Source: Zygophlyctis sp. KS116 (Eukaryota > Fungi > Chytridiomycota). Taken from it: a DNA stretch of 18,027 nt. A model generated the notes under the pieces. That model made no database searches. It worked only from the letters and a program-made list of their open reading frames with translations, and was not told the DNA's origin. The translations under genes were made by a program, and so were the position numbers. Positions 8,424 to 17,908 of the stretch are shown piece by piece. Position 1 is the first letter of the stretch. Each line of letters opens with the position of its first letter. The stretch is from the NCBI GenBank assembly GCA_054661495.1, contig BAAFSQ010000203.1, forward strand, positions 1 through 18,027, given 5' to 3'.

Positions 8424-9332
8424 TTAATCAGCCGACGTTTCAGTGTCTTGTAAAGATGCACTTAGTGCTAATCCCAGCTGTAATTCATAATCTTCTTCCT
8501 TTCCAGAATCATTACTTTTAAACAAGTTTTCTACTTTTCCTGCTGCATCTGATGATATATTTTTGACTCTTGTAAGAAAAGATTCTAAAAAAACTTTAGA
8601 TTTTCCAATACTAGCCTTGAAATTTGAATTTTTTAGAAATATTGAATCTTGTAAATTTAAAGTTAATGATTTTGGTGATAGATTAAAGATGAATGATACT
8701 GCTCCCATCTATAATTCTTTAAAAATAATTTAAATTACCATATTAGTTAGTGTAAATTGTACTAATCCTTCAGACACTTTTTCTGGATGTCTATATCTCA
8801 TGATATACTTTATATGAGAGATTAAATCTACTGGTTCAGATCTAATAATTGTAATAATTAGAGCAGGTAGTAAATAATCATTTCCCTTGACTCCTAATTT
8901 TGATATAATACCATTGACTAAATTCCCAAGATTTAATAAAACTACTAATTTATCCCATGGACAAGAGTAGTCTTGCAATTTAAATTCTTGTTTTGGAAAA
9001 GTATTGTCTGGAAATGGTAAATCTAAATGTCTTTCCTTGATCCAAGAGAATTCCTGAATCTTTAGAGATAATAAAGAGTTTGTAGATACTTCATCTGCCG
9101 GACAATATAGACTAGAATATAAATTACAAGTGACTATTTTCTCCCATCCTTCTAGTACTAGTTCCCGATCAAATTCTGGAAATGTGTGACTGACAGACTT
9201 GAGAAACTTGAATATTATTCTTCTCTTCAAAGGAATTGGAGCTTCTAGAGGAAATGTAGAAATAAATTCAGATAGTTTACTAGATTCTTGCGTCGTCTTG
9301 AGTTTAGAGATAAATGTGTCAATATTGATCAT
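8424..9332 (-). CDS. VPS9-domain Rab5-type GEF with C-terminal ubiquitin-interacting motif, ~292 aa; exons 9332-8739, 8708-8424
   Basis: VPS9 hallmarks FSWIKERHLD, PWDKL, GNDYLLPALI (cf. GADDLLP), YIMRYR and FTLTNM|MGAVSFI across a 30-nt intron (8738-8709). UIM-like EEDYELQLGLALSASLQD near the C-terminus. Confidence 0.8.
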
Positions 9333-9340
9333 TACGAAAA

Positions 9341-10549
<1,209 letters not shown>

Positions 10550-10583
10550 TTAATAAGAGTCAAGATTTAGGTTCACTGATCAA
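10550..10583. promoter_or_regulatory. 34-bp spacer between divergent LEU2 and dehydratase start codons (putative bidirectional promoter)
   Basis: Start codons at 10549 (-) and 10584 (+), both matching the expected N-termini of their families. The promoter role is inferred from position only. Confidence 0.55.
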
Positions 10584-12691
10584 ATGGGACAAACAAAGCG
10601 ACCAATGACTTTATGCGAAAAGATCATTTGCAATTCTGCAGTTGGTCTTGATCGCCCTTGGGTAAAACCAGGAGATATGGTGTGCGTGTCTGTAGACTGG
10701 ACGATTGCGTCAGAATTGACTTGGAAAGGGATGGAAAAAACATTTGATTCTATGAATAGGCCAAAGATATTTAGAGCTGATAGATTTTGGTTGGCGATTG
10801 ATCATACTGTTGATCCTTCAAATTATCATTTGCCAAAACCAAAGGAATTAATTGACGCTTCAGAGCGCTTTGCAAAAGAAGCTAAATTAACTGATTTTCA
10901 TGGTCCAAATCAGACAATTCTTCATACAGAATTCTATCGTGAAAGAGCTTTACCAGGTCAAATGATTATTGGTGCAGACTCTCACTCTTGTTCGGCTGGT
11001 GGACTAGGAAATTTTGCTGTAGGCCTAGGAGCTGCAGATGTAGTTATGCCACTAGTAACTGGTGAAACGTGGTTTAAAGTTCCAGAAACAGTTGAAATTA
11101 GATTTGAAGGGCAACTTAAACCTGGGATTGGAGGAAAGGATGTCATCCTGTACGTGTTGGGTATGTTGAAAAGAAATACAGTTGCTTTTGAAAGAGCTGT
11201 AGAGTATACTGGGGATGGTATGTGTTTTTACAAAATATTAAATTCTAAATGAAATCCTAAAAATAGGTTTAAAGTACTTGTCTTGTGATGCAAGGTTTGC
11301 TATTGCAAATATGACTACAGAATTTGGAGGGATTGCTGGAGTATTTCAGGCAGATGAAATTACAGCCGCTTATATTTCTAAACGTAAAAGGCCAGAATAC
11401 TCTACTGGAGGGCTTTATTTTAGAGCAGATACAGATGCTCAGTATGTTGAATCTCATGTGATTGATTTAAGTCTTGTTGACTCAATGGCAGCATTATATC
11501 CCTCTCCTGATAACGTGGTACATGTTGACAAATTTGCGGGTACTTCTTTAGATGGGTGTTTTATTGGAGCATGTACAACTGGTGAAGAGGATTTGATCTT
11601 GGCCGCATTGGTTTTAGAAGCTGGTTTAAAGAAAGGATGGATGCCTTGTTTAACTGGAAAACGAAAAGTCACACCTGGATCAGTCAGTATTGTCGCCAAG
11701 CTTCGTAAATATGGTCTTTTGGATATTTATACCAAGGCTGGATTCGAAATTGGAGCTCCAGGATGCTCTTACTGTCTGGGAATTGCGGCTGATAAGGCCG
11801 GTGAGGGTGAAGTTTGGTTATCATCTCAAAATCGAAACTTTAAAAATCGAATGGGTAAAGGTTCGATTGGGAATCTAGCTTCAGCAGCAACAGTGGCTGC
11901 TTCCTCTTTTGAAATGAAGGTGGTGAATCCTAGAATATTATTAGATGAAATTGATTATTCACGATTCAAATCAATGTCGATCGGAGAAGAAAAAGAATCA
12001 ATCGATCTTGTCATTTCAGAACCTGCTCCAAGAACAGGTGAGCCAGTTAGTAAAGCTGTATCAACTGATTCGCAAAAAGGAAATGCATTTGAGCATCTAC
12101 CCAGTACCATTTCTGGAAAGGTACAGCGATTTGAAGATCATGTTGATACTGATGGTAATAACATATACTTTTGATAATTTAGCAATTATACCAGCAGAAT
12201 TTATGCCGGGAACTTCAGACAAGGATTTAGGGACGCATTGTTTCCAATACGTTCGTCCTGATTTCCGTGAAAAGGCTGCATCAGGATCTTCCATTGTTGT
12301 TGCCGGAGTTGGTTTTGGTTCCGGTTCTTCAAGAGAAGAAGCCCCGAGAGCATTATTGGGTTGTGGAATTAAAGCTGTGATTGCCAAGTCATACGCTTAC
12401 ATATACTCTAGGAATCAGCCCAATATGGCTCTTCTTGGGGTTGTTGTGAAAGATCCAAAATTCTATGAAAAGGCTGTGGAGGGTGTTCATGTAGAACTTG
12501 ATATTCCTAATAGAGCTGTAAAAGTTGGAAGTGAAGCTTATCCATTTGAACTTGATCCTATGGAAGAAATGCTGATCGCTGGTGGTGGTGTCACCTCTCT
12601 CTACTCTAAATTTGGCTCTAGTCTTTTCCGAAAAACTATTGAAAAATCTCAGAATCAACAGTGTGGCAATAATAAAGCGATTGATTTTTAG
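10584..12691 (+). CDS. Aconitase-family dehydratase, fused LeuC-like and LeuD-like domains (isopropylmalate isomerase/homoaconitase type, HtyD/AMT8-like), ~676 aa; exons 10584-11217, 11267-12154, 12183-12691
   Basis: [38 protein letters not shown], Fe-S Cys motifs GACTTG and [19 protein letters not shown], and swivel-domain motifs VDTDAIIP and [10 protein letters not shown]. Introns 11218-11266 (49 nt) and 12155-12182 (28 nt) restore one frame. Confidence 0.9.
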
Positions 12692-12972: not shown

Positions 12973-15774
12973 TCAATATTGGGCTCCAAGACTTAATGCT
13001 TCTTGTTTGTATTTGTCGGCAAGATCTGATTGGCCAATTTTATTCAAACCTTCGACAAGAGATTCATAAATATCAATCTTTCCAGATGAAAATGACTGAT
13101 CTTCAACACATTCCAACAACCTATGGAAAGACTGTAAGATCATTGGCACGTTTTTTGTTTCCAAATAACCTGCAAACAGAATATATTCTATTTCAGCTGT
13201 TGAAAACACTTTTTAATTAGTAAACTAAAATTATATACCATTCAGTTTCTCATGCATAACCGCCAAAAAATAATCAGCGCATTCGACAAATCCTTCATCT
13301 ACCATAAAGAGTACAACATCATGAATAACTCTGAATTTCATTTTTGGGGAATGAATTTTATCCATCAATTCAGCAACCATTTGAACCATTTTTTGATCCG
13401 CTTCTTCAGTCTGCATTCTTGAATAGCCCGTAATCATGATTCTAGAAGGCGAATCAGAATATGCTAAAGACTTTGACTGAACTGACTCCCAAAGAGACTC
13501 TGCTTTTTCCATATTAGAATCCAGATATGCAAAGCCTTTCAAAATCCATTTGTGAGAAAATGCATCAAATTCCAGTGAGCTTTTACGTACCATCCTTAAC
13601 ACAGCCTTGATTTTCTCTAGATCCTTTATACTAAGAAAATGTTCAAAGGCTATATTAACGGGCATAATGTTGTCGCCTTGCGGAATGTAGGTTTGAATTA
13701 CTTGCAGTACTAAGTCATCCCTTTTATGAGCAGAAAAAATATGTAACAAATGTTGATAAGACCAATTTCCAAGCTTGACCTTGTGTTCCAGAGATGTATT
13801 AAACATCTGCAATGCCACATCCAAGTTTTGATCAGCATTTGAGGCTATAAATATCATCTGTTCAACTATATCTCCAGTGTATCTTCCAGGGTTTAAATAC
13901 GCAAAAACCGATTGAGCAGATTTAAGTTGTTTTTGATTTACATCAGGTAATTTCGATAAATTATCGATGAAATCGTGTATCATCATTGACTCTGGTAAAA
14001 CATTCACCGAGGTAGCCATATCTTCAATCAATTCGGCGGCTTCAACGAATAAACCAGATTTGACCATTGAAAAAACAGTATTGTAGTAAAATGGATTATC
14101 CTTTAATTCAAAACATTTTACATACGATCTGAACAATAATCGCAGTTGGCCAAACTGTTTAAATGTAATATTTAGATTGACCAACATTAGAAAATATTTT
14201 GAAGATTCTAAAAAATCGAAACCTTCCTCCAGTAGCTGTAACGCATAAGAATTGGCACTATCCACATTCTTTGAGTCAAGAGCATAACGAAATTTGGCCA
14301 AAAGAGGGGATTTATAGAGATTAATTGTGCTTTTGGTGACAGGATTTTCTTTATTTTTCAATCGATTTATCTGAATTTTCCATTTGGAGGGTATATATCT
14401 TGCCATATTAAAGAAGCGATTAATTTCACTCAGAGTTTCATCTGCAAGAGGCCATTTTTTAAGATGGGCCGCAGTTTCAGACAAAATTATCAGTGAAGAC
14501 TCTACATCCTGCATGGAAAATGATGAATTCATAATTGCCTTGACAATAAGTTGAAAATCTTCTTTTGTTGGAATAAATTCATTCGCACTATGCACCATGG
14601 TTAAAAAATGCTCTGCCCAAATGTGAAATGCCTTTCGTAACTTTAAACTCTTCTTAAAACCATGATCAGCGTCATTTAAGTTTCTAGACGATTTCAGTTC
14701 CTCTTCTAAATCAGAATAGCAAACATCCATCAGAGGATACAATTCGGTTACATCACTTGGCCTCTTTACTGGTATAGTATTAAATACATCTTTTTTTTCC
14801 TGTAAATTCATAAACACCCTTCTTTTTTCAATCATAGACTTTAAACCACAATATAATCCATCCAAAATATCTAAATTCTGATTAATTATTTGCGGATCTG
14901 TTGATTTAACCAATCTGATAATTTCTCTAAACCTTTTCAAGACTATATAACTTTGTAAAACCATTAATCTAACACGAACATCCTTCAAAAGATTAGTTTT
15001 TACATGAGGAGGAATCTTTTCAAAATTCGAAACAAAAACGAAGGGCGGATTAGACGCAAACAGAGGCAATATTAAATATTCATAAAGCTGATCTGTAGTA
15101 AACTTGTTTGAATTCACCATTAAAGGAATCATATTTTTTTGATTATTCAGAATTGAGAATTTACAGTATTCCAAATAGACTGAATTATTACTTTTAAGCT
15201 TTGAAGAATGATAATAGTCAAAAGTCAATTCCATCCTTTTTAAATTCTCTGCCAACCCATTAGCCACTATATCTGAATGAATCAATTCCAAAACATTATA
15301 ATCTGTATGAAATGATAAAGAAAAATTAGATTTATACTCTCTTAATTTTTCAGCTGCACCTAAATGTCCCCAGACTTGTAAAATCGGAGTAGAATGATTA
15401 TTCAAAATACTCTCAATTTTCACATTTTTCAACAATGTCTCTACAAATTCCCTTTCCTATATTTTTTTAAAAAATTTAAAACTTACAAATTTCCAATTTT
15501 TCAATAATTCTAGTCTAGTTTTAGCCCAATGATTTGGAGTTTTCCTATCCAATTCCAATGCTTTATAATTCCTAGAAACCAAATGATTTCTAACAATAGT
15601 TATCAAATCACAGACATTATTCCTAGAAAGTCCATCATCTTTAATCTTTTCGTATAAAACTCTAATATATTTCAAATGAGATCTTGCAGGCAGAGATCCC
15701 ATAACACTAATTATATTATCAATTGGAATTTTCCTTGCATTGACTGCTAAAGAATACCAAGAATTCAATTTCAT
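12973..15774 (-). CDS. Large alpha-solenoid, PPR-like repeat protein (possibly a mitochondrial RNA-binding protein), ~913 aa; exons 15774-15487, 15456-13239, 13208-12973
   Basis: Two 30-nt introns (15486-15457, 13238-13209) join three ORFs in frame. Degenerate PPR-like segments: YYNTVFSMVKSGLFVEAAELIEDM, SYQHLLHIFS, SHKWILKGFA..NMEKAESLWESV, IMITGYSR. Confidence 0.6.
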
Positions 15775-15864: not shown

Positions 15865-15918
15865 ACTCAGTAGGACACTCTGTAGGACACTCAGTAGGAC
15901 AGGAAAACTCAGTAGGAA
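15865..15918. repeat. 12-bp tandem repeat ACTC(A/T)GTAGGAC x3 plus a fourth degenerate copy
   Basis: Copies at 15865, 15877 and 15889, and ACTCAGTAGGAA at 15907. Confidence 0.9.
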
Positions 15919-15973
15919 AAACTCTTTAAAAACCTAAAATAATCTACAAAATTTCTAAAAAAAATCTACTTTT

Positions 15974-16057
15974 AAACCTAGAAAATTCTAGTTTTTATAT
16001 TTTAAACCTAGAAAATTTTAAACCTAGAATGGAAAACCTAGAAGGCAAAACCTAGAA
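15974..16057. repeat. Five copies of AAACCTAGAA with irregular spacing
   Basis: Exact 10-mer at 15974, 16004, 16020, 16034 and 16048. Confidence 0.9.
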
Positions 16058-16225
16058 TGGAAATGTAAAATTTTAACAGTAAGTGGCAGTGCACAGACAG
16101 TGGCAGACAGTGGCGTAATGACATCATCAGAGAAAATGTGGCAGAATGTGGCGTTTTAGGGCGATCATTTGACAAACCGCCGATCATAAAATTTTTAAAA
16201 AAGAATTTCGATTCAAAAGTCCAAA

Positions 16226-17908
16226 ATGTCAAGCTTCAAAACCGATGATCTTGAGCCTCTAGACTCTATTAAATCTATTTCAGACTCTACAGTCCAACAG
16301 ATTATATCATCAGTGTCTAATAGAAAAGACCCTAAAATTAAGCTAGGACGGGTGGATTTCTCTTGTTCTTTTCTAATTACTGATGCAAATGCACAAATTG
16401 TTTTTGTGTCTCCAACATTCACTCGGACAACTGGTTACTCGCAATGTGAAGTTATTGGGAAAAATCCAAGGTTTTTACAGTCGCCAGGTGGGAATGTAGA
16501 GCCGGGCGCCGTAAGGAAATACTCTGATAATAATGTTATTTCTCATATAAAGGCATCTCTGGATAATGTCGCTGAATGTCAGTACTCTCTAGTCAATTAT
16601 AGGAAAAATTTGGAACCGTTTATTAATTTAGTCACTGTTATTCCTATATTTTTAGGAGAAAATTTGGATTATTATATTGGGCTACAGATTGATTTAGTAG
16701 AACATCCAGAGTCTATAGTAGAAAGAATGGATGATGGGAATTATTATGTAAACTATTCTAGAAAAGATGGTCAAGATTACTCTAATAATACTATAGAGTA
16801 TTTGGATTTAATTAATCAACATCCAGTAGAAGAAATTCCTATTCCAGTTTTTCATTCACAATTTATAGATAATTGTGGAGATTTGGTTTATATATTGTCT
16901 ATTAGAGGATTAGTACTATATACTTCTCCAAAATCATGTAAAGATTTACTGGGATTTGAGTCTGAAGAAGTTCAAGGTCAACATATATCTGAATTAGTTC
17001 ATCCGTCAGATTTGGTTTTTGTTCAAAGGGAATTAAGGTCTGCATCTCCAACACAAGTTATAAATCTTATTTGTAGATTTAAAATTAAACCTGGTGGATA
17101 TATTACAATGGATCTTCGTGGGCATGTGTATCAAGGAGAAACAGGGAAAAGGACAAGATGTATAGTCATGTCTGGAAGAGAAAAAAAGACTGGAACTTTA
17201 CTTTTGACAGATATACTTGAACCAAGTTTGGATAATTCAGAAGTTTGGTTAAAGATTTCTCCTCAAGGATTGATTCTTTTTGCAGATTCTGGATCCATGA
17301 ATGTTTTTGGAGTCTCTTCAGAGATTTTATATTCTAAATCTTTGCTTGATTTTGTAAATCAAGTTGATAAAACTCGTGTCAAACAATCTTTAGAATATGC
17401 AAGTGGAGTTGTTAGATTTTTTGATATTGTTAATTTACCATTGATTACACCTCTAGGACATTTAATAGCTCATGTTAGGATTTACAATCTAAGTGATGAT
17501 TCTAGAGTCTCTACAAAACATTTAGTTTTACAAATCAAACTAGTAGTAGACTCTAAAGGCCTCAATTATAGAATATCTACAAAAACTTTGACTGATTTCT
17601 CACAATGTTTTATTAATGGAAACATTCTAGACTATCATGATGGACCCTCTTCTATATACTATGAACTTAATCAGTTGAGAGTAGAAAACAAGAAGCTCAA
17701 GGATAGGCTGGAAGACTATGAGAAAAAGGTAATTTCTTTTAACTTAAATTTCTAGATTTACACAAACAAGACCTGGTCATTCTCGTCTAGTGATTCAAAT
17801 ACTGAAATACCTCTAATTTACTTTCCATTTAATGAAAAATCACCGCATGTGTCTCCTTCTGGGCCTTCTGGACCTTGTGGAGATGGTAGTTTCTATGGGA
17901 TTCTCTAA
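16226..17908 (+). CDS. White collar-1-like LOV-PAS-PAS protein with Cys-to-Pro LOV motif and no GATA finger, ~551 aa; exons 16226-17728, 17756-17908
   Basis: WC-1/VVD-type N-cap KLGRVDFSCSF; LOV core TGYSQCEVIGKNPRFLQSPGG..VNYRKN..PFINLVTVIP..IGLQIDLVEHP; PAS-B YILSIRG...HPSDLVFVQREL; PAS-C KISPQGLILF; WC-1-like tail SSIYYELNQLRVENKKLK. A 27-nt intron (17729-17755) leads to a 50-aa last exon. Confidence 0.88.

What the first reader, a model, noticed from the sequence alone, without database searches (positions are those of the whole stretch)
16226..16710. Cysteine-less LOV domain (GKNPRFLQ) in a fungal White collar-1 homologue
Seen: the adduct-forming Cys of GxNCRFLQ is Pro81 (codon CCA at 16466-16468, three changes from TGY, so not a single base-call error). 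Flavin-contacting residues remain (NxR..Q, VNYRK, FIN, signalling Gln in GLQID), as do the WC-1/VVD extended loop (SPGGNVEPGAVRKYSD) and the N-cap Cys (DFSC). Known: Cys-less LOV domains cannot form the C4a adduct but can signal through flavin photoreduction, and Pro at this site occurs in haloarchaeal BAT-type LOV domains and the redox sensor NifL. Inference: a natural eukaryotic adduct-free photoreceptor, a redox/oxygen sensor, or a light-blind WC-1 paralogue. It is also a candidate flavin fluorescent protein or photosensitiser.
Basis: partly seen in the sequence, partly recalled or inferred. Interest (0 to 1): 0.8.

Follow-up and report, generated by a model that had tools for sequence, protein, structure and literature searches.

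The report
Cysteine-less White Collar-1 paralogue, lake chytrid
A lake chytrid fungus keeps, beside two normal blue-light receptor genes, a third copy whose light-reactive cysteine has long been replaced by proline but which is still under strong selection, so it is a natural test of whether such receptors can work without the usual light chemistry.

Summary
Window 16226-17908 (+) encodes a 551-aa White Collar-1 (WC-1)-type protein: LOV, PAS-B, PAS-C, coiled coil and no GATA finger. Pro81 (CCA, 16466-16468) sits where Vivid has the adduct-forming Cys108.

It is not an error or a pseudogene:
- Five metagenomic orthologues (74-99% identical) all carry Pro, encoded CCA or CCT.
- LOV dN/dS within this clade is 0.04-0.18.
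- All other canonical flavin and signalling residues, the FAD loop and the N-cap hinge Cys are kept.
- The AlphaFold model fits Vivid at 1.3 Å.

The same 12.7-Mb genome has two Cys-bearing WC-1-like genes, a WC-2-like PAS-GATA gene, photolyase/cryptochrome genes and rhodopsins, so this is not a dark-living organism. The Pro clade (support 100/100) is sister to a Cys clade (95/91) and has a longer stem. Its LOV evolves about three times faster relative to PAS-B.

Among 150 family representatives I found one other intact Cys-less case (Ala). The mechanism is open: a flavin-reduction sensor (about 0.4) or a light-blind regulatory subunit (about 0.35). Natural Cys-less LOV domains are known (BAT-LOV also has Pro), so this is a new variant. 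Reads could not be checked. Apart from a note on this same stretch, the findings searches I ran returned no note of this on other DNA.

The parts
16226..17728 (+). Exon 1 of the WC-1-type gene (codons 1-501)
   Evidence: ORF. Pfam PAS_9 at residues 47-157 and PAS/PAS_3 at 212-315. Orthologues P0001 and P0005 start with the same MSSF....
17729..17755 (+). 27-nt GT..AG intron
   Evidence: Read from the sequence. Exon 2 then continues in frame, and its product matches the intron-free C-terminus of orthologue P0003 (W-S-x-SSSDSN-x-EIPLIY ... FYG-x-L). P0002 and P0004 gene calls read through the intron.
17756..17908 (+). Exon 2 (50 codons plus stop), a conserved C-terminal tail with no GATA zinc finger
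   Evidence: Translation and alignment with P0003.
16343..16705 (+). LOV core with N-cap hinge (residues 40-160)
   Evidence: Vivid alignment. AlphaFold2 pLDDT 86, with Vivid 2pd7 at rmsd 1.3 Å and TM 0.83-0.90.
16466..16468 (+). [quoted passage not shown]
   Evidence: It is CCA or CCT in all six clade members. The sister clade has TGC.
16481..16528 (+). Eα-Fα insertion (residues 86-101), the FAD-adenosine loop typical of WC-1 and Vivid
   Evidence: Aligned with the Vivid loop and present in all fungal homologues.
16364..16366 (+). Cys47, equivalent to the Vivid Cys71 hinge
   Evidence: alignment (DFSC versus DTSC).
16685..16687 (+). Gln154 codon, the signalling glutamine (Vivid Gln182)
   Evidence: Invariant column Q135 of alignment A3, which is residue 154. 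Its role is described in PMC4682037.
16841..17200 (+). PAS-B (residues 206-325)
   Evidence: Pfam PAS/PAS_3. dN/dS is 0.015-0.083 within the clade.
17201..17728 (+). PAS-C-like region and coiled coil (residues 326-501)
   Evidence: Aligned with the WC-1 PAS-C and the NQLR..NK.L helix of all homologues. dN/dS is 0.07-0.14.

Best explanation
Shown: this is an intact WC-1 paralogue under purifying selection in an uncultured freshwater chytrid. It arose by duplication of a canonical Cys-bearing WC-1. On the stem of its clade the adduct-forming Cys became Pro. With no thiol next to flavin C4a it cannot make the cysteinyl-C4a photoadduct. Inferred: the LOV domain still binds FAD. It reports flavin N5 protonation through the retained Gln154 and N-cap hinge, the route shown for Cys-less Vivid and YF1. 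[quoted passage not shown] It probably acts in a White Collar complex with the genome's PAS-GATA WC-2 protein and/or the Cys paralogues. There it would serve as a low-sensitivity input gated by light, redox state and oxygen, alongside the canonical adduct-forming receptors.
For: Real and selected:
- Pro is present in six independent assemblies, encoded CCA or CCT.
- LOV dN/dS is 0.04-0.18 at dS 0.4-2.3.
- ORFs are intact in all members except one A-run length difference in L010.

Paralogue:
- G000 has Cys-bearing copies on C49 and C110.
- The Pro clade (100/100) is sister to the Cys clade (100/98), joined at 95/91.

Flavin binding and signalling probably kept:
- G78, N80, R82, F83, L84, Q85, N124, N134 and Q154 are all invariant in the clade, which meets the Yee 2015 criteria for Cys-less LOV-like domains.
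- The FAD loop and the Cys47 hinge are retained.
- The model superposes on Vivid including the N-cap.
- Only six positions in 501 show a clade-fixed change at a site that is at least 85% conserved elsewhere.

Precedent (PMC4682037):
- Vivid C108A photoreduces to the neutral semiquinone with a relative quantum efficiency of about 0.11 and forms the normal light-state dimer in a Gln182-dependent way.
- BAT-LOV, which also has Pro at this site, binds flavin and changes conformation on reduction.

Partner and setting:
- A PAS plus GATA gene lies on C677.
- The organism has photolyase/cryptochrome and rhodopsin genes, so it lives in light.
Against: No biochemical data exist. Flavin binding, photoreduction and partner binding are all inferred. 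The LOV domain of the Pro clade evolves 1.8-3.9 times as fast as its PAS-B, against 0.74-0.80 in the Cys sister clade. The stem branch is 0.53 against 0.20. A 3-residue deletion removes the conserved D-x-P of the Aβ-Bβ hairpin. All three fit a loss of photocycle constraints and hence a blind subunit. Wild-type BAT-LOV, the only characterised Pro case, photoreduces poorly and bound only modest flavin. Conservation of the flavin residues could reflect fold stability alone.
Confidence: 0.4

Rival explanations
1. Light-blind regulatory subunit, a 'pseudo-photoreceptor'. After duplication this copy lost photochemistry and kept FAD only as a structural cofactor. It would compete for WC-2 or heterodimerise with the Cys paralogues to set gain. 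Alternatively it would carry the light-independent (dark) functions of the White Collar complex, much as light-independent cryptochromes became clock repressors.
For: A canonical Cys paralogue is present in the same genome, so light sensing is already covered. The stem is long, at 0.53 against 0.20. LOV evolves about three times faster relative to PAS-B than in the sister clade. PAS-B and PAS-C, the presumed partner-binding parts, are the most constrained (dN/dS 0.015-0.14). BAT-LOV with Pro photoreduces poorly. From established knowledge, Neurospora WC-1 LOV mutants keep the dark clock function.
Against: If sensing were lost, Gln154 and the Cys47 hinge would have no special reason to stay, yet both are invariant. 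The one other Cys-less WC-1-like protein found (P0153, Ala) has lost the Gln as well, which is what a truly blind LOV might look like. A flavin-bound Cys-less LOV with an intact Gln is expected to respond to strong light by default (PMC4682037).
Confidence: 0.35
2. Cofactor-less PAS domain. The LOV-derived domain no longer binds flavin and serves only as a dimerisation module or binds another ligand.
For: The hairpin deletion and Pro in the pocket are consistent with this. Constraint is partly relaxed. BAT-LOV bound only modest flavin when expressed.
Against: All nine canonical flavin-contact and motif residues and the FAD-adenosine loop are invariant across dS greater than 1. Pocket-lining positions show only conservative changes.
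Confidence: 0.1
3. Artefact or decaying gene: a base-call or assembly error at codon 81, or a pseudogene.
For: None found. One orthologue contig (L010) has an A8 versus A7 run that breaks the frame.
Against: Six assemblies from different sources (own genome, ENA, JGI, Logan) carry Pro with CCA/CCT variation. dN/dS is about 0.1 over the whole gene. In L010 the sequence stays conserved in the original frame after the A-run.
Confidence: 0.02

Closest known systems
Neurospora Vivid and WC-1 LOV domains (FAD-binding fungal LOV; PDB 2pd7, 3rh8)
   Same: About 38% identity. Same fold including the N-cap (rmsd 1.2-1.4 Å), the FAD loop, the hinge Cys, the NxRFLQ / NY / FxN / GxQ residues, and LOV-PAS-PAS order as in WC-1.
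   Different: Pro replaces Cys108. There is a 3-residue deletion in the Aβ-Bβ hairpin. There is no GATA finger and no glutamine-rich activation regions.
Sister Cys-bearing WC-1 clade of the same chytrid lineage (G000 C49; P0007-P0012)
   Same: 53-57% identity. Same length and architecture, also without a GATA finger, and same type of samples.
   Different: It has GKNCRFLQ (TGC), the full hairpin, Phe instead of Tyr120 and Gln instead of His160. Its LOV evolves more slowly than its PAS-B.
BAT-LOV* of Halorubrum (a natural Cys-less LOV-like domain with Pro; Yee et al. 2015, PMC4682037)
   Same: Pro at the adduct position with the other LOV signature residues kept. It is proposed to signal by flavin reduction.
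   Different: It is archaeal, lacks the FAD-loop insertion and sits in a receiver-LOV-GAF-HTH protein. It is an independent origin. The chytrid protein is a WC-1 paralogue.
Engineered Vivid-III (C108A:M135I:M165I)
   Same: The window protein has Ile108 and Val138 at the two Met positions as well as lacking Cys (alignment with 3rh8).
   Different: These two positions are Ile/Met and Val/Ile/Met across the clade and also in Cys-bearing relatives, so they are not a clade-specific adaptation. Pro rather than Ala.
Basidiomycete WC-1 (for example Schizophyllum or Cryptococcus Bwc1)
   Same: WC-1 without its own zinc finger, relying on a GATA-bearing WC-2 (abstract of 10.1101/2024.02.13.580115). G000 has such a WC-2-like gene.
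   Different: Those proteins keep the Cys (P0042 Piloderma has NCRFLQ).

Membership tests
LOV domain (photoactive flavin-binding PAS) | PAS α/β fold of the LOV type | tested here: met
   Pfam PAS_9, E 3e-18. AlphaFold2 pLDDT 86, and Foldseek top hits are Vivid with TM 0.83-0.91.
LOV domain (photoactive flavin-binding PAS) | Conserved flavin-contact and signature residues (G, N, R, F, L, Q of GxNCRFLQ; two Asn on Gβ/Hβ; Gln on Iβ) | tested here: met
   G78, N80, R82, F83, L84, Q85, N124, N134 and Q154 are present and invariant in the clade.
LOV domain (photoactive flavin-binding PAS) | Adduct-forming cysteine | tested here: not met
   Pro81 aligns with Vivid Cys108, and Pro is present in all six clade members.
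LOV domain (photoactive flavin-binding PAS) | Binds FMN or FAD and shows a blue-light photocycle | not testable with these tools
   Needs expression and spectroscopy.
Natural Cys-less LOV-like domains (LOV*, criteria of Yee et al. 2015) | Lacks the Cys but has at least 9 of the other 10 conserved LOV residues | tested here: met
   Criteria are quoted. All nine residues named there have their counterparts here.
White Collar-1 | LOV followed by PAS-B and PAS-C, with the FAD-loop insertion in LOV | tested here: met
   Pfam. Full-length alignment with named chytrid, Mucoromycota and basidiomycete WC-1 proteins.
White Collar-1 | Falls inside the fungal WC-1 tree | tested here: met
   It nests within the chytrid WC-1 sequences. 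The nearest named relative is Kappamyces.
White Collar-1 | C-terminal GATA zinc finger | tested here: not met
   Exon 2 ends the protein without a finger. The same holds for the Cys sister clade and is known for basidiomycete WC-1, so this feature is not universal.
White Collar-1 | A WC-2 partner (PAS plus GATA) in the same genome | tested here: met
   G000 C677 carries a PAS match and a GATA finger in one gene. Physical interaction was not tested.
Redox-sensing FAD-PAS (NifL or Aer type) | Signalling by flavin reduction and oxidation without light | not testable with these tools
   This is only an analogy drawn in PMC4682037. No closer sequence relation to NifL or Aer than to LOV was seen among the PDB hits.

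The most novel reading that the evidence does not exclude
[quoted passage not shown] It would have been kept for a long time beside canonical WC-1 paralogues as a high-light and oxygen/redox-gated channel of the White Collar system. That would be in-vivo evolutionary support for the idea of Yee et al. that LOV signalling rests on N5 protonation, not on the adduct.
Probability: 0.3. Interest if true: 0.75.

Novelty: new variant of a known kind. Interest (0 to 1): 0.55.

Why it matters
Adduct-free LOV signalling has been shown with engineered mutants and proposed for a few prokaryotic proteins. Here nature supplies a matched pair in one eukaryotic genome: a canonical Cys WC-1 and a sister paralogue with Pro. 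Both are under purifying selection and have several orthologues each. That makes the question directly testable: does a Cys-less LOV sense light or redox state in vivo, or does it become a blind regulator? The tests are spectroscopy, a P81C reversion and partner-binding assays. The domain is also a natural starting point for flavin-based fluorescent, photosensitiser or radical-pair (magnetic field) probes, a use now being explored for the archaeal Cys-less LOVs (bioRxiv 10.64898/2026.07.30.741865).

Tried and rejected
Neither the codon in raw reads nor transcription could be checked, and read laying was not used.
- The metagenome scan gave only five loci, four of them in or near the Cys clade, so the Pro clade stays at six sequences plus four near-identical cluster members.
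- Literature: no paper holds the string NPRFLQ. None combined 'white collar' with 'lacks the conserved cysteine'. The Entomophthora paper proved irrelevant.
- The idea that the fungus lives in the dark and is losing light sensing is rejected. It has two Cys WC-1-like genes, WC-2, three photolyase/cryptochrome hits and rhodopsins.
- The idea that Ile108 and Val138 (the Vivid M135I/M165I positions) are an adaptation to the Cys loss is rejected. These positions vary equally in Cys-bearing relatives.
- The joined two-exon protein was not sent to any search. Exon 1 and exon 2 were handled separately by reference. The C110 paralogue entered the tree only as its largest exon.
- No PAML or HyPhy is available, so no formal branch or RELAX test was run. 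Only pairwise Nei-Gojobori estimates were made, and many dS values are near saturation.

Full report
**Observation**

The window holds an ORF at 16226-17755 on the + strand. It is exon 1 (16226-17728, 501 codons) of a gene that continues after a 27-nt GT..AG intron (17729-17755) into exon 2 (17756-17908, 50 codons plus stop). The exon 2 product matches the uninterrupted C-terminus of orthologue P0003, which supports the splice. There is no GATA zinc finger.

Pfam finds a LOV-type PAS_9 domain (residues 47-157) and a second PAS domain (212-315). Against the PDB the N-terminal 185 residues match Vivid best (E 3.8e-29). In that alignment Vivid's GRNCRFLQ lies on GKNPRFLQ, so Pro81 (CCA, 16466-16468) takes the place of the adduct-forming Cys108. 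The FAD-adenosine loop and the hinge Cys (DFSC versus DTSC) are also aligned.

**Not an error, not a pseudogene**

A word-based protein search found five close relatives, from metagenomes only (P0001-P0005, 74-99% identical). All have GKNPRFLQ. The next group (P0007-P0012, 53-57%) and all named chytrid, Mucoromycota and basidiomycete WC-1 proteins have Cys.

I fetched the DNA of the five relatives. The Pro codon is CCA in the window and P0001 and CCT in the other four. The sister group has TGC.

Pairwise Nei-Gojobori estimates within the Pro clade (dS 0.4-2.3):

| Region | dN/dS |
|---|---|
| LOV domain | 0.04-0.18 |
| PAS-B | 0.015-0.083 |
| Whole gene | 0.08-0.18 |

One orthologue contig (L010) has an A8 versus A7 run that breaks the frame. 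The sequence stays conserved in the old frame afterwards, so I read this as an assembly error.

**It is a paralogue**

The window's own assembly (12.7 Mb, 1175 contigs) contains two more WC-1-like genes.
- One is on contig C49 (500-aa ORF, GKNCRFLQ). It is nearly identical to P0008.
- One is a divergent gene on C110. Its Cys codon is split TG|T by a 23-nt intron.

The assembly also has a PAS plus GATA gene on C677, a WC-2-like partner. It has three photolyase/cryptochrome-type hits and several rhodopsin hits. Earlier notes of this scan describe the organism as an uncultured freshwater chytrid with rhodopsin-guanylyl cyclases. My Pfam hits agree with that. So the Cys loss is not part of a general loss of light sensing.

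**Tree**

I built an IQ-TREE (LG+C20 PMSF) of 35 proteins.
- The Pro clade has support 100/100 and the C49-type Cys clade 100/98. They are sisters at 95/91.
- The next branches out are an unnamed metagenomic protein and then Kappamyces (Rhizophydiales).
- The genome has one gene in each clade, so a duplication preceded the divergence of the sampled species. Cys to Pro happened once, on the stem of the Pro clade.
- That stem is longer (0.53 against 0.20 substitutions per site).
- The C110 gene entered the tree only as its largest exon, and its branch is long and its placement uncertain.

**What changed and what did not**

Only six residues are fixed in the Pro clade and differ from a residue that is at least 85% conserved in all other homologues: C81P, Q160H, L165V, F220L, M267Q and E296D. 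A 3-residue deletion in the Aβ-Bβ hairpin also removes the D-x-P of the usual D-x-P-I-V-Y.

The signature residues used by Yee et al. to define Cys-less LOV-like domains are all present and invariant: G78, N80, R82, F83, L84, Q85, N124, N134 and Q154.

I mapped the sequence onto the AsLOV2 pocket using numbering from memory, which was not tool-checked. On that mapping the remaining pocket positions show only conservative variation. Tyr120 is fixed in the Pro clade and is Phe in the sister clade. Tyr/Phe/Trp150 lies at the Phe509 position.

An AlphaFold2 model of residues 20-172 has pLDDT 86. It superposes on Vivid at 1.2-1.4 Å over 138 columns, N-cap included.

**Partial relaxation of LOV**

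| Clade | LOV dN / PAS-B dN |
|---|---|
| Pro clade (10 pairs) | 1.8-3.9 |
| Cys sister clade | 0.74-0.80 |

The Cys-clade figure rests on three pairs, two of which use the same sequence. So LOV is under strong but clearly weaker relative constraint after the Cys loss.

**How rare is it**

An exhaustive HMMER search of 1.84 billion cluster representatives gave 330 proteins at E up to 1e-30. I inspected the best 150.
- Every WC-1-like LOV has Cys at this position, apart from two gene-model artefacts and the one exception below.
- The exception is P0153, which has Ala and has also lost the signalling Gln.
- The Pro clade itself is hidden under the 50% representative P0008.
- Some bacterial GGDEF/EAL PAS proteins carry GKNPRFLQSG, but without the FAD loop.

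**Known background**

- Yee et al. 2015 (PMC4682037) showed that Vivid C108A:M135I:M165I photoreduces to the neutral semiquinone and forms the normal light-state dimer in a Gln182-dependent manner. They showed that YF1 C62A still regulates its output.
- They also found about 70 GenBank proteins that are LOV-like without the Cys (Ala, His or Pro). Among these is BAT-LOV of a haloarchaeon, which has Pro. It binds flavin modestly, photoreduces poorly and changes conformation on chemical reduction.
- Their list of architectures includes a few eukaryote-type entries, but none was studied.
- A 2026 preprint counts three characterised natural Cys-less LOV domains, all prokaryotic.
- I found no paper on a Cys-less WC-1.

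**Mechanism**

Shown: the protein cannot form the cysteinyl adduct, and it is maintained by selection as a third WC-1-type gene beside canonical ones.

Inferred: it still binds FAD. Beyond that, two readings are about equally likely.

(a) Flavin-reduction sensor, about 0.4. Blue light in the reducing cytosol, or cellular reductants, convert FAD to the neutral semiquinone. N5 protonation flips Gln154 and releases the N-cap as in Vivid. Oxygen resets the state slowly. The result is a low-sensitivity input gated by light, redox state and oxygen to a complex with WC-2 and/or the Cys paralogues. I favour this slightly for three reasons. Given flavin binding and an intact Gln, it is the default biophysical behaviour. 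Gln154 and the hinge Cys are kept. The one other Cys-less WC-1-like protein has lost its Gln, which shows what a truly blind domain can look like.

(b) Light-blind regulatory subunit, about 0.35. FAD is structural only. The protein competes for WC-2 or pairs with the Cys paralogues, or it carries dark functions of the complex. The long stem, the relative relaxation of LOV, the hairpin deletion and the poor photoreduction of BAT-LOV fit this reading.

A cofactor-less PAS domain (about 0.1) and an artefact or pseudogene (about 0.02) are less likely.

**Limits**

- The joined two-exon protein was not used in any search. The exons were handled separately by reference.
- dS is near saturation for the deeper pairs.
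- No formal branch test was possible.
From memory NifL has Glu70 there.

**Verdict**

It belongs to a known phenomenon, natural Cys-less LOV domains. It is a new variant of a known kind, of moderate to good interest.

Noticed in passing
window 15865-16154: The 450-nt gap between the upstream minus-strand ORF and the WC-1 start holds three blocks of short direct repeats: ACTCAGTAGGACA x4 (15865-15919), AAACCTAGAA x5 (about 15975-16063) and GTGGCAG/GTGGCG x5-6 (16083-16154). These may be clustered promoter elements of a divergent gene pair.
   Followed up: partly
P0153 (605 aa, Logan contig of 48.7 kb); member P0200: This is a second, independent Cys-less WC-1-like protein. It has GRNARFMQ (Ala) with the FAD loop kept, but the signalling Gln is replaced (GFCADM). 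Its origin is unnamed.
   Followed up: partly
G000 C110 (L003:67-1743, minus strand): A third, divergent WC-1-like gene. Its adduct Cys codon is split TG|T by a 23-nt intron, which is shorter than the 25-31 nt noted elsewhere for this genome.
   Followed up: partly
G000 C677 (L020:54-1058): A WC-2-like gene: one PAS domain, a coiled coil and a GATA finger interrupted by a short intron. It lies on a 2.4-kb contig next to a carboxylesterase-like ORF.
   Followed up: partly
L006:8-2921 versus window 8730-12691: In orthologue contig L006 the LEU2 (Iso_dh) and aconitase-type LeuC/D genes lie directly upstream of the WC-1 gene. In the window a 734-aa minus-strand ORF (13231-15435) and a 105-aa ORF lie in between. 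Synteny is therefore partial, with an insertion or a loss.
   Followed up: no
L010:990-1005: An A8 versus A7 homopolymer difference breaks the frame of orthologue P0005. It is probably an assembly error, because conservation continues in the old frame.
   Followed up: yes
P0048, P0051, P0056 (bacterial GGDEF/EAL or PAS proteins): Bacterial PAS domains with the same N-P-R-F-L-Q string (GKNPRFLQSG) but without the FAD loop. Pro at this position recurs in PAS domains.
   Followed up: no
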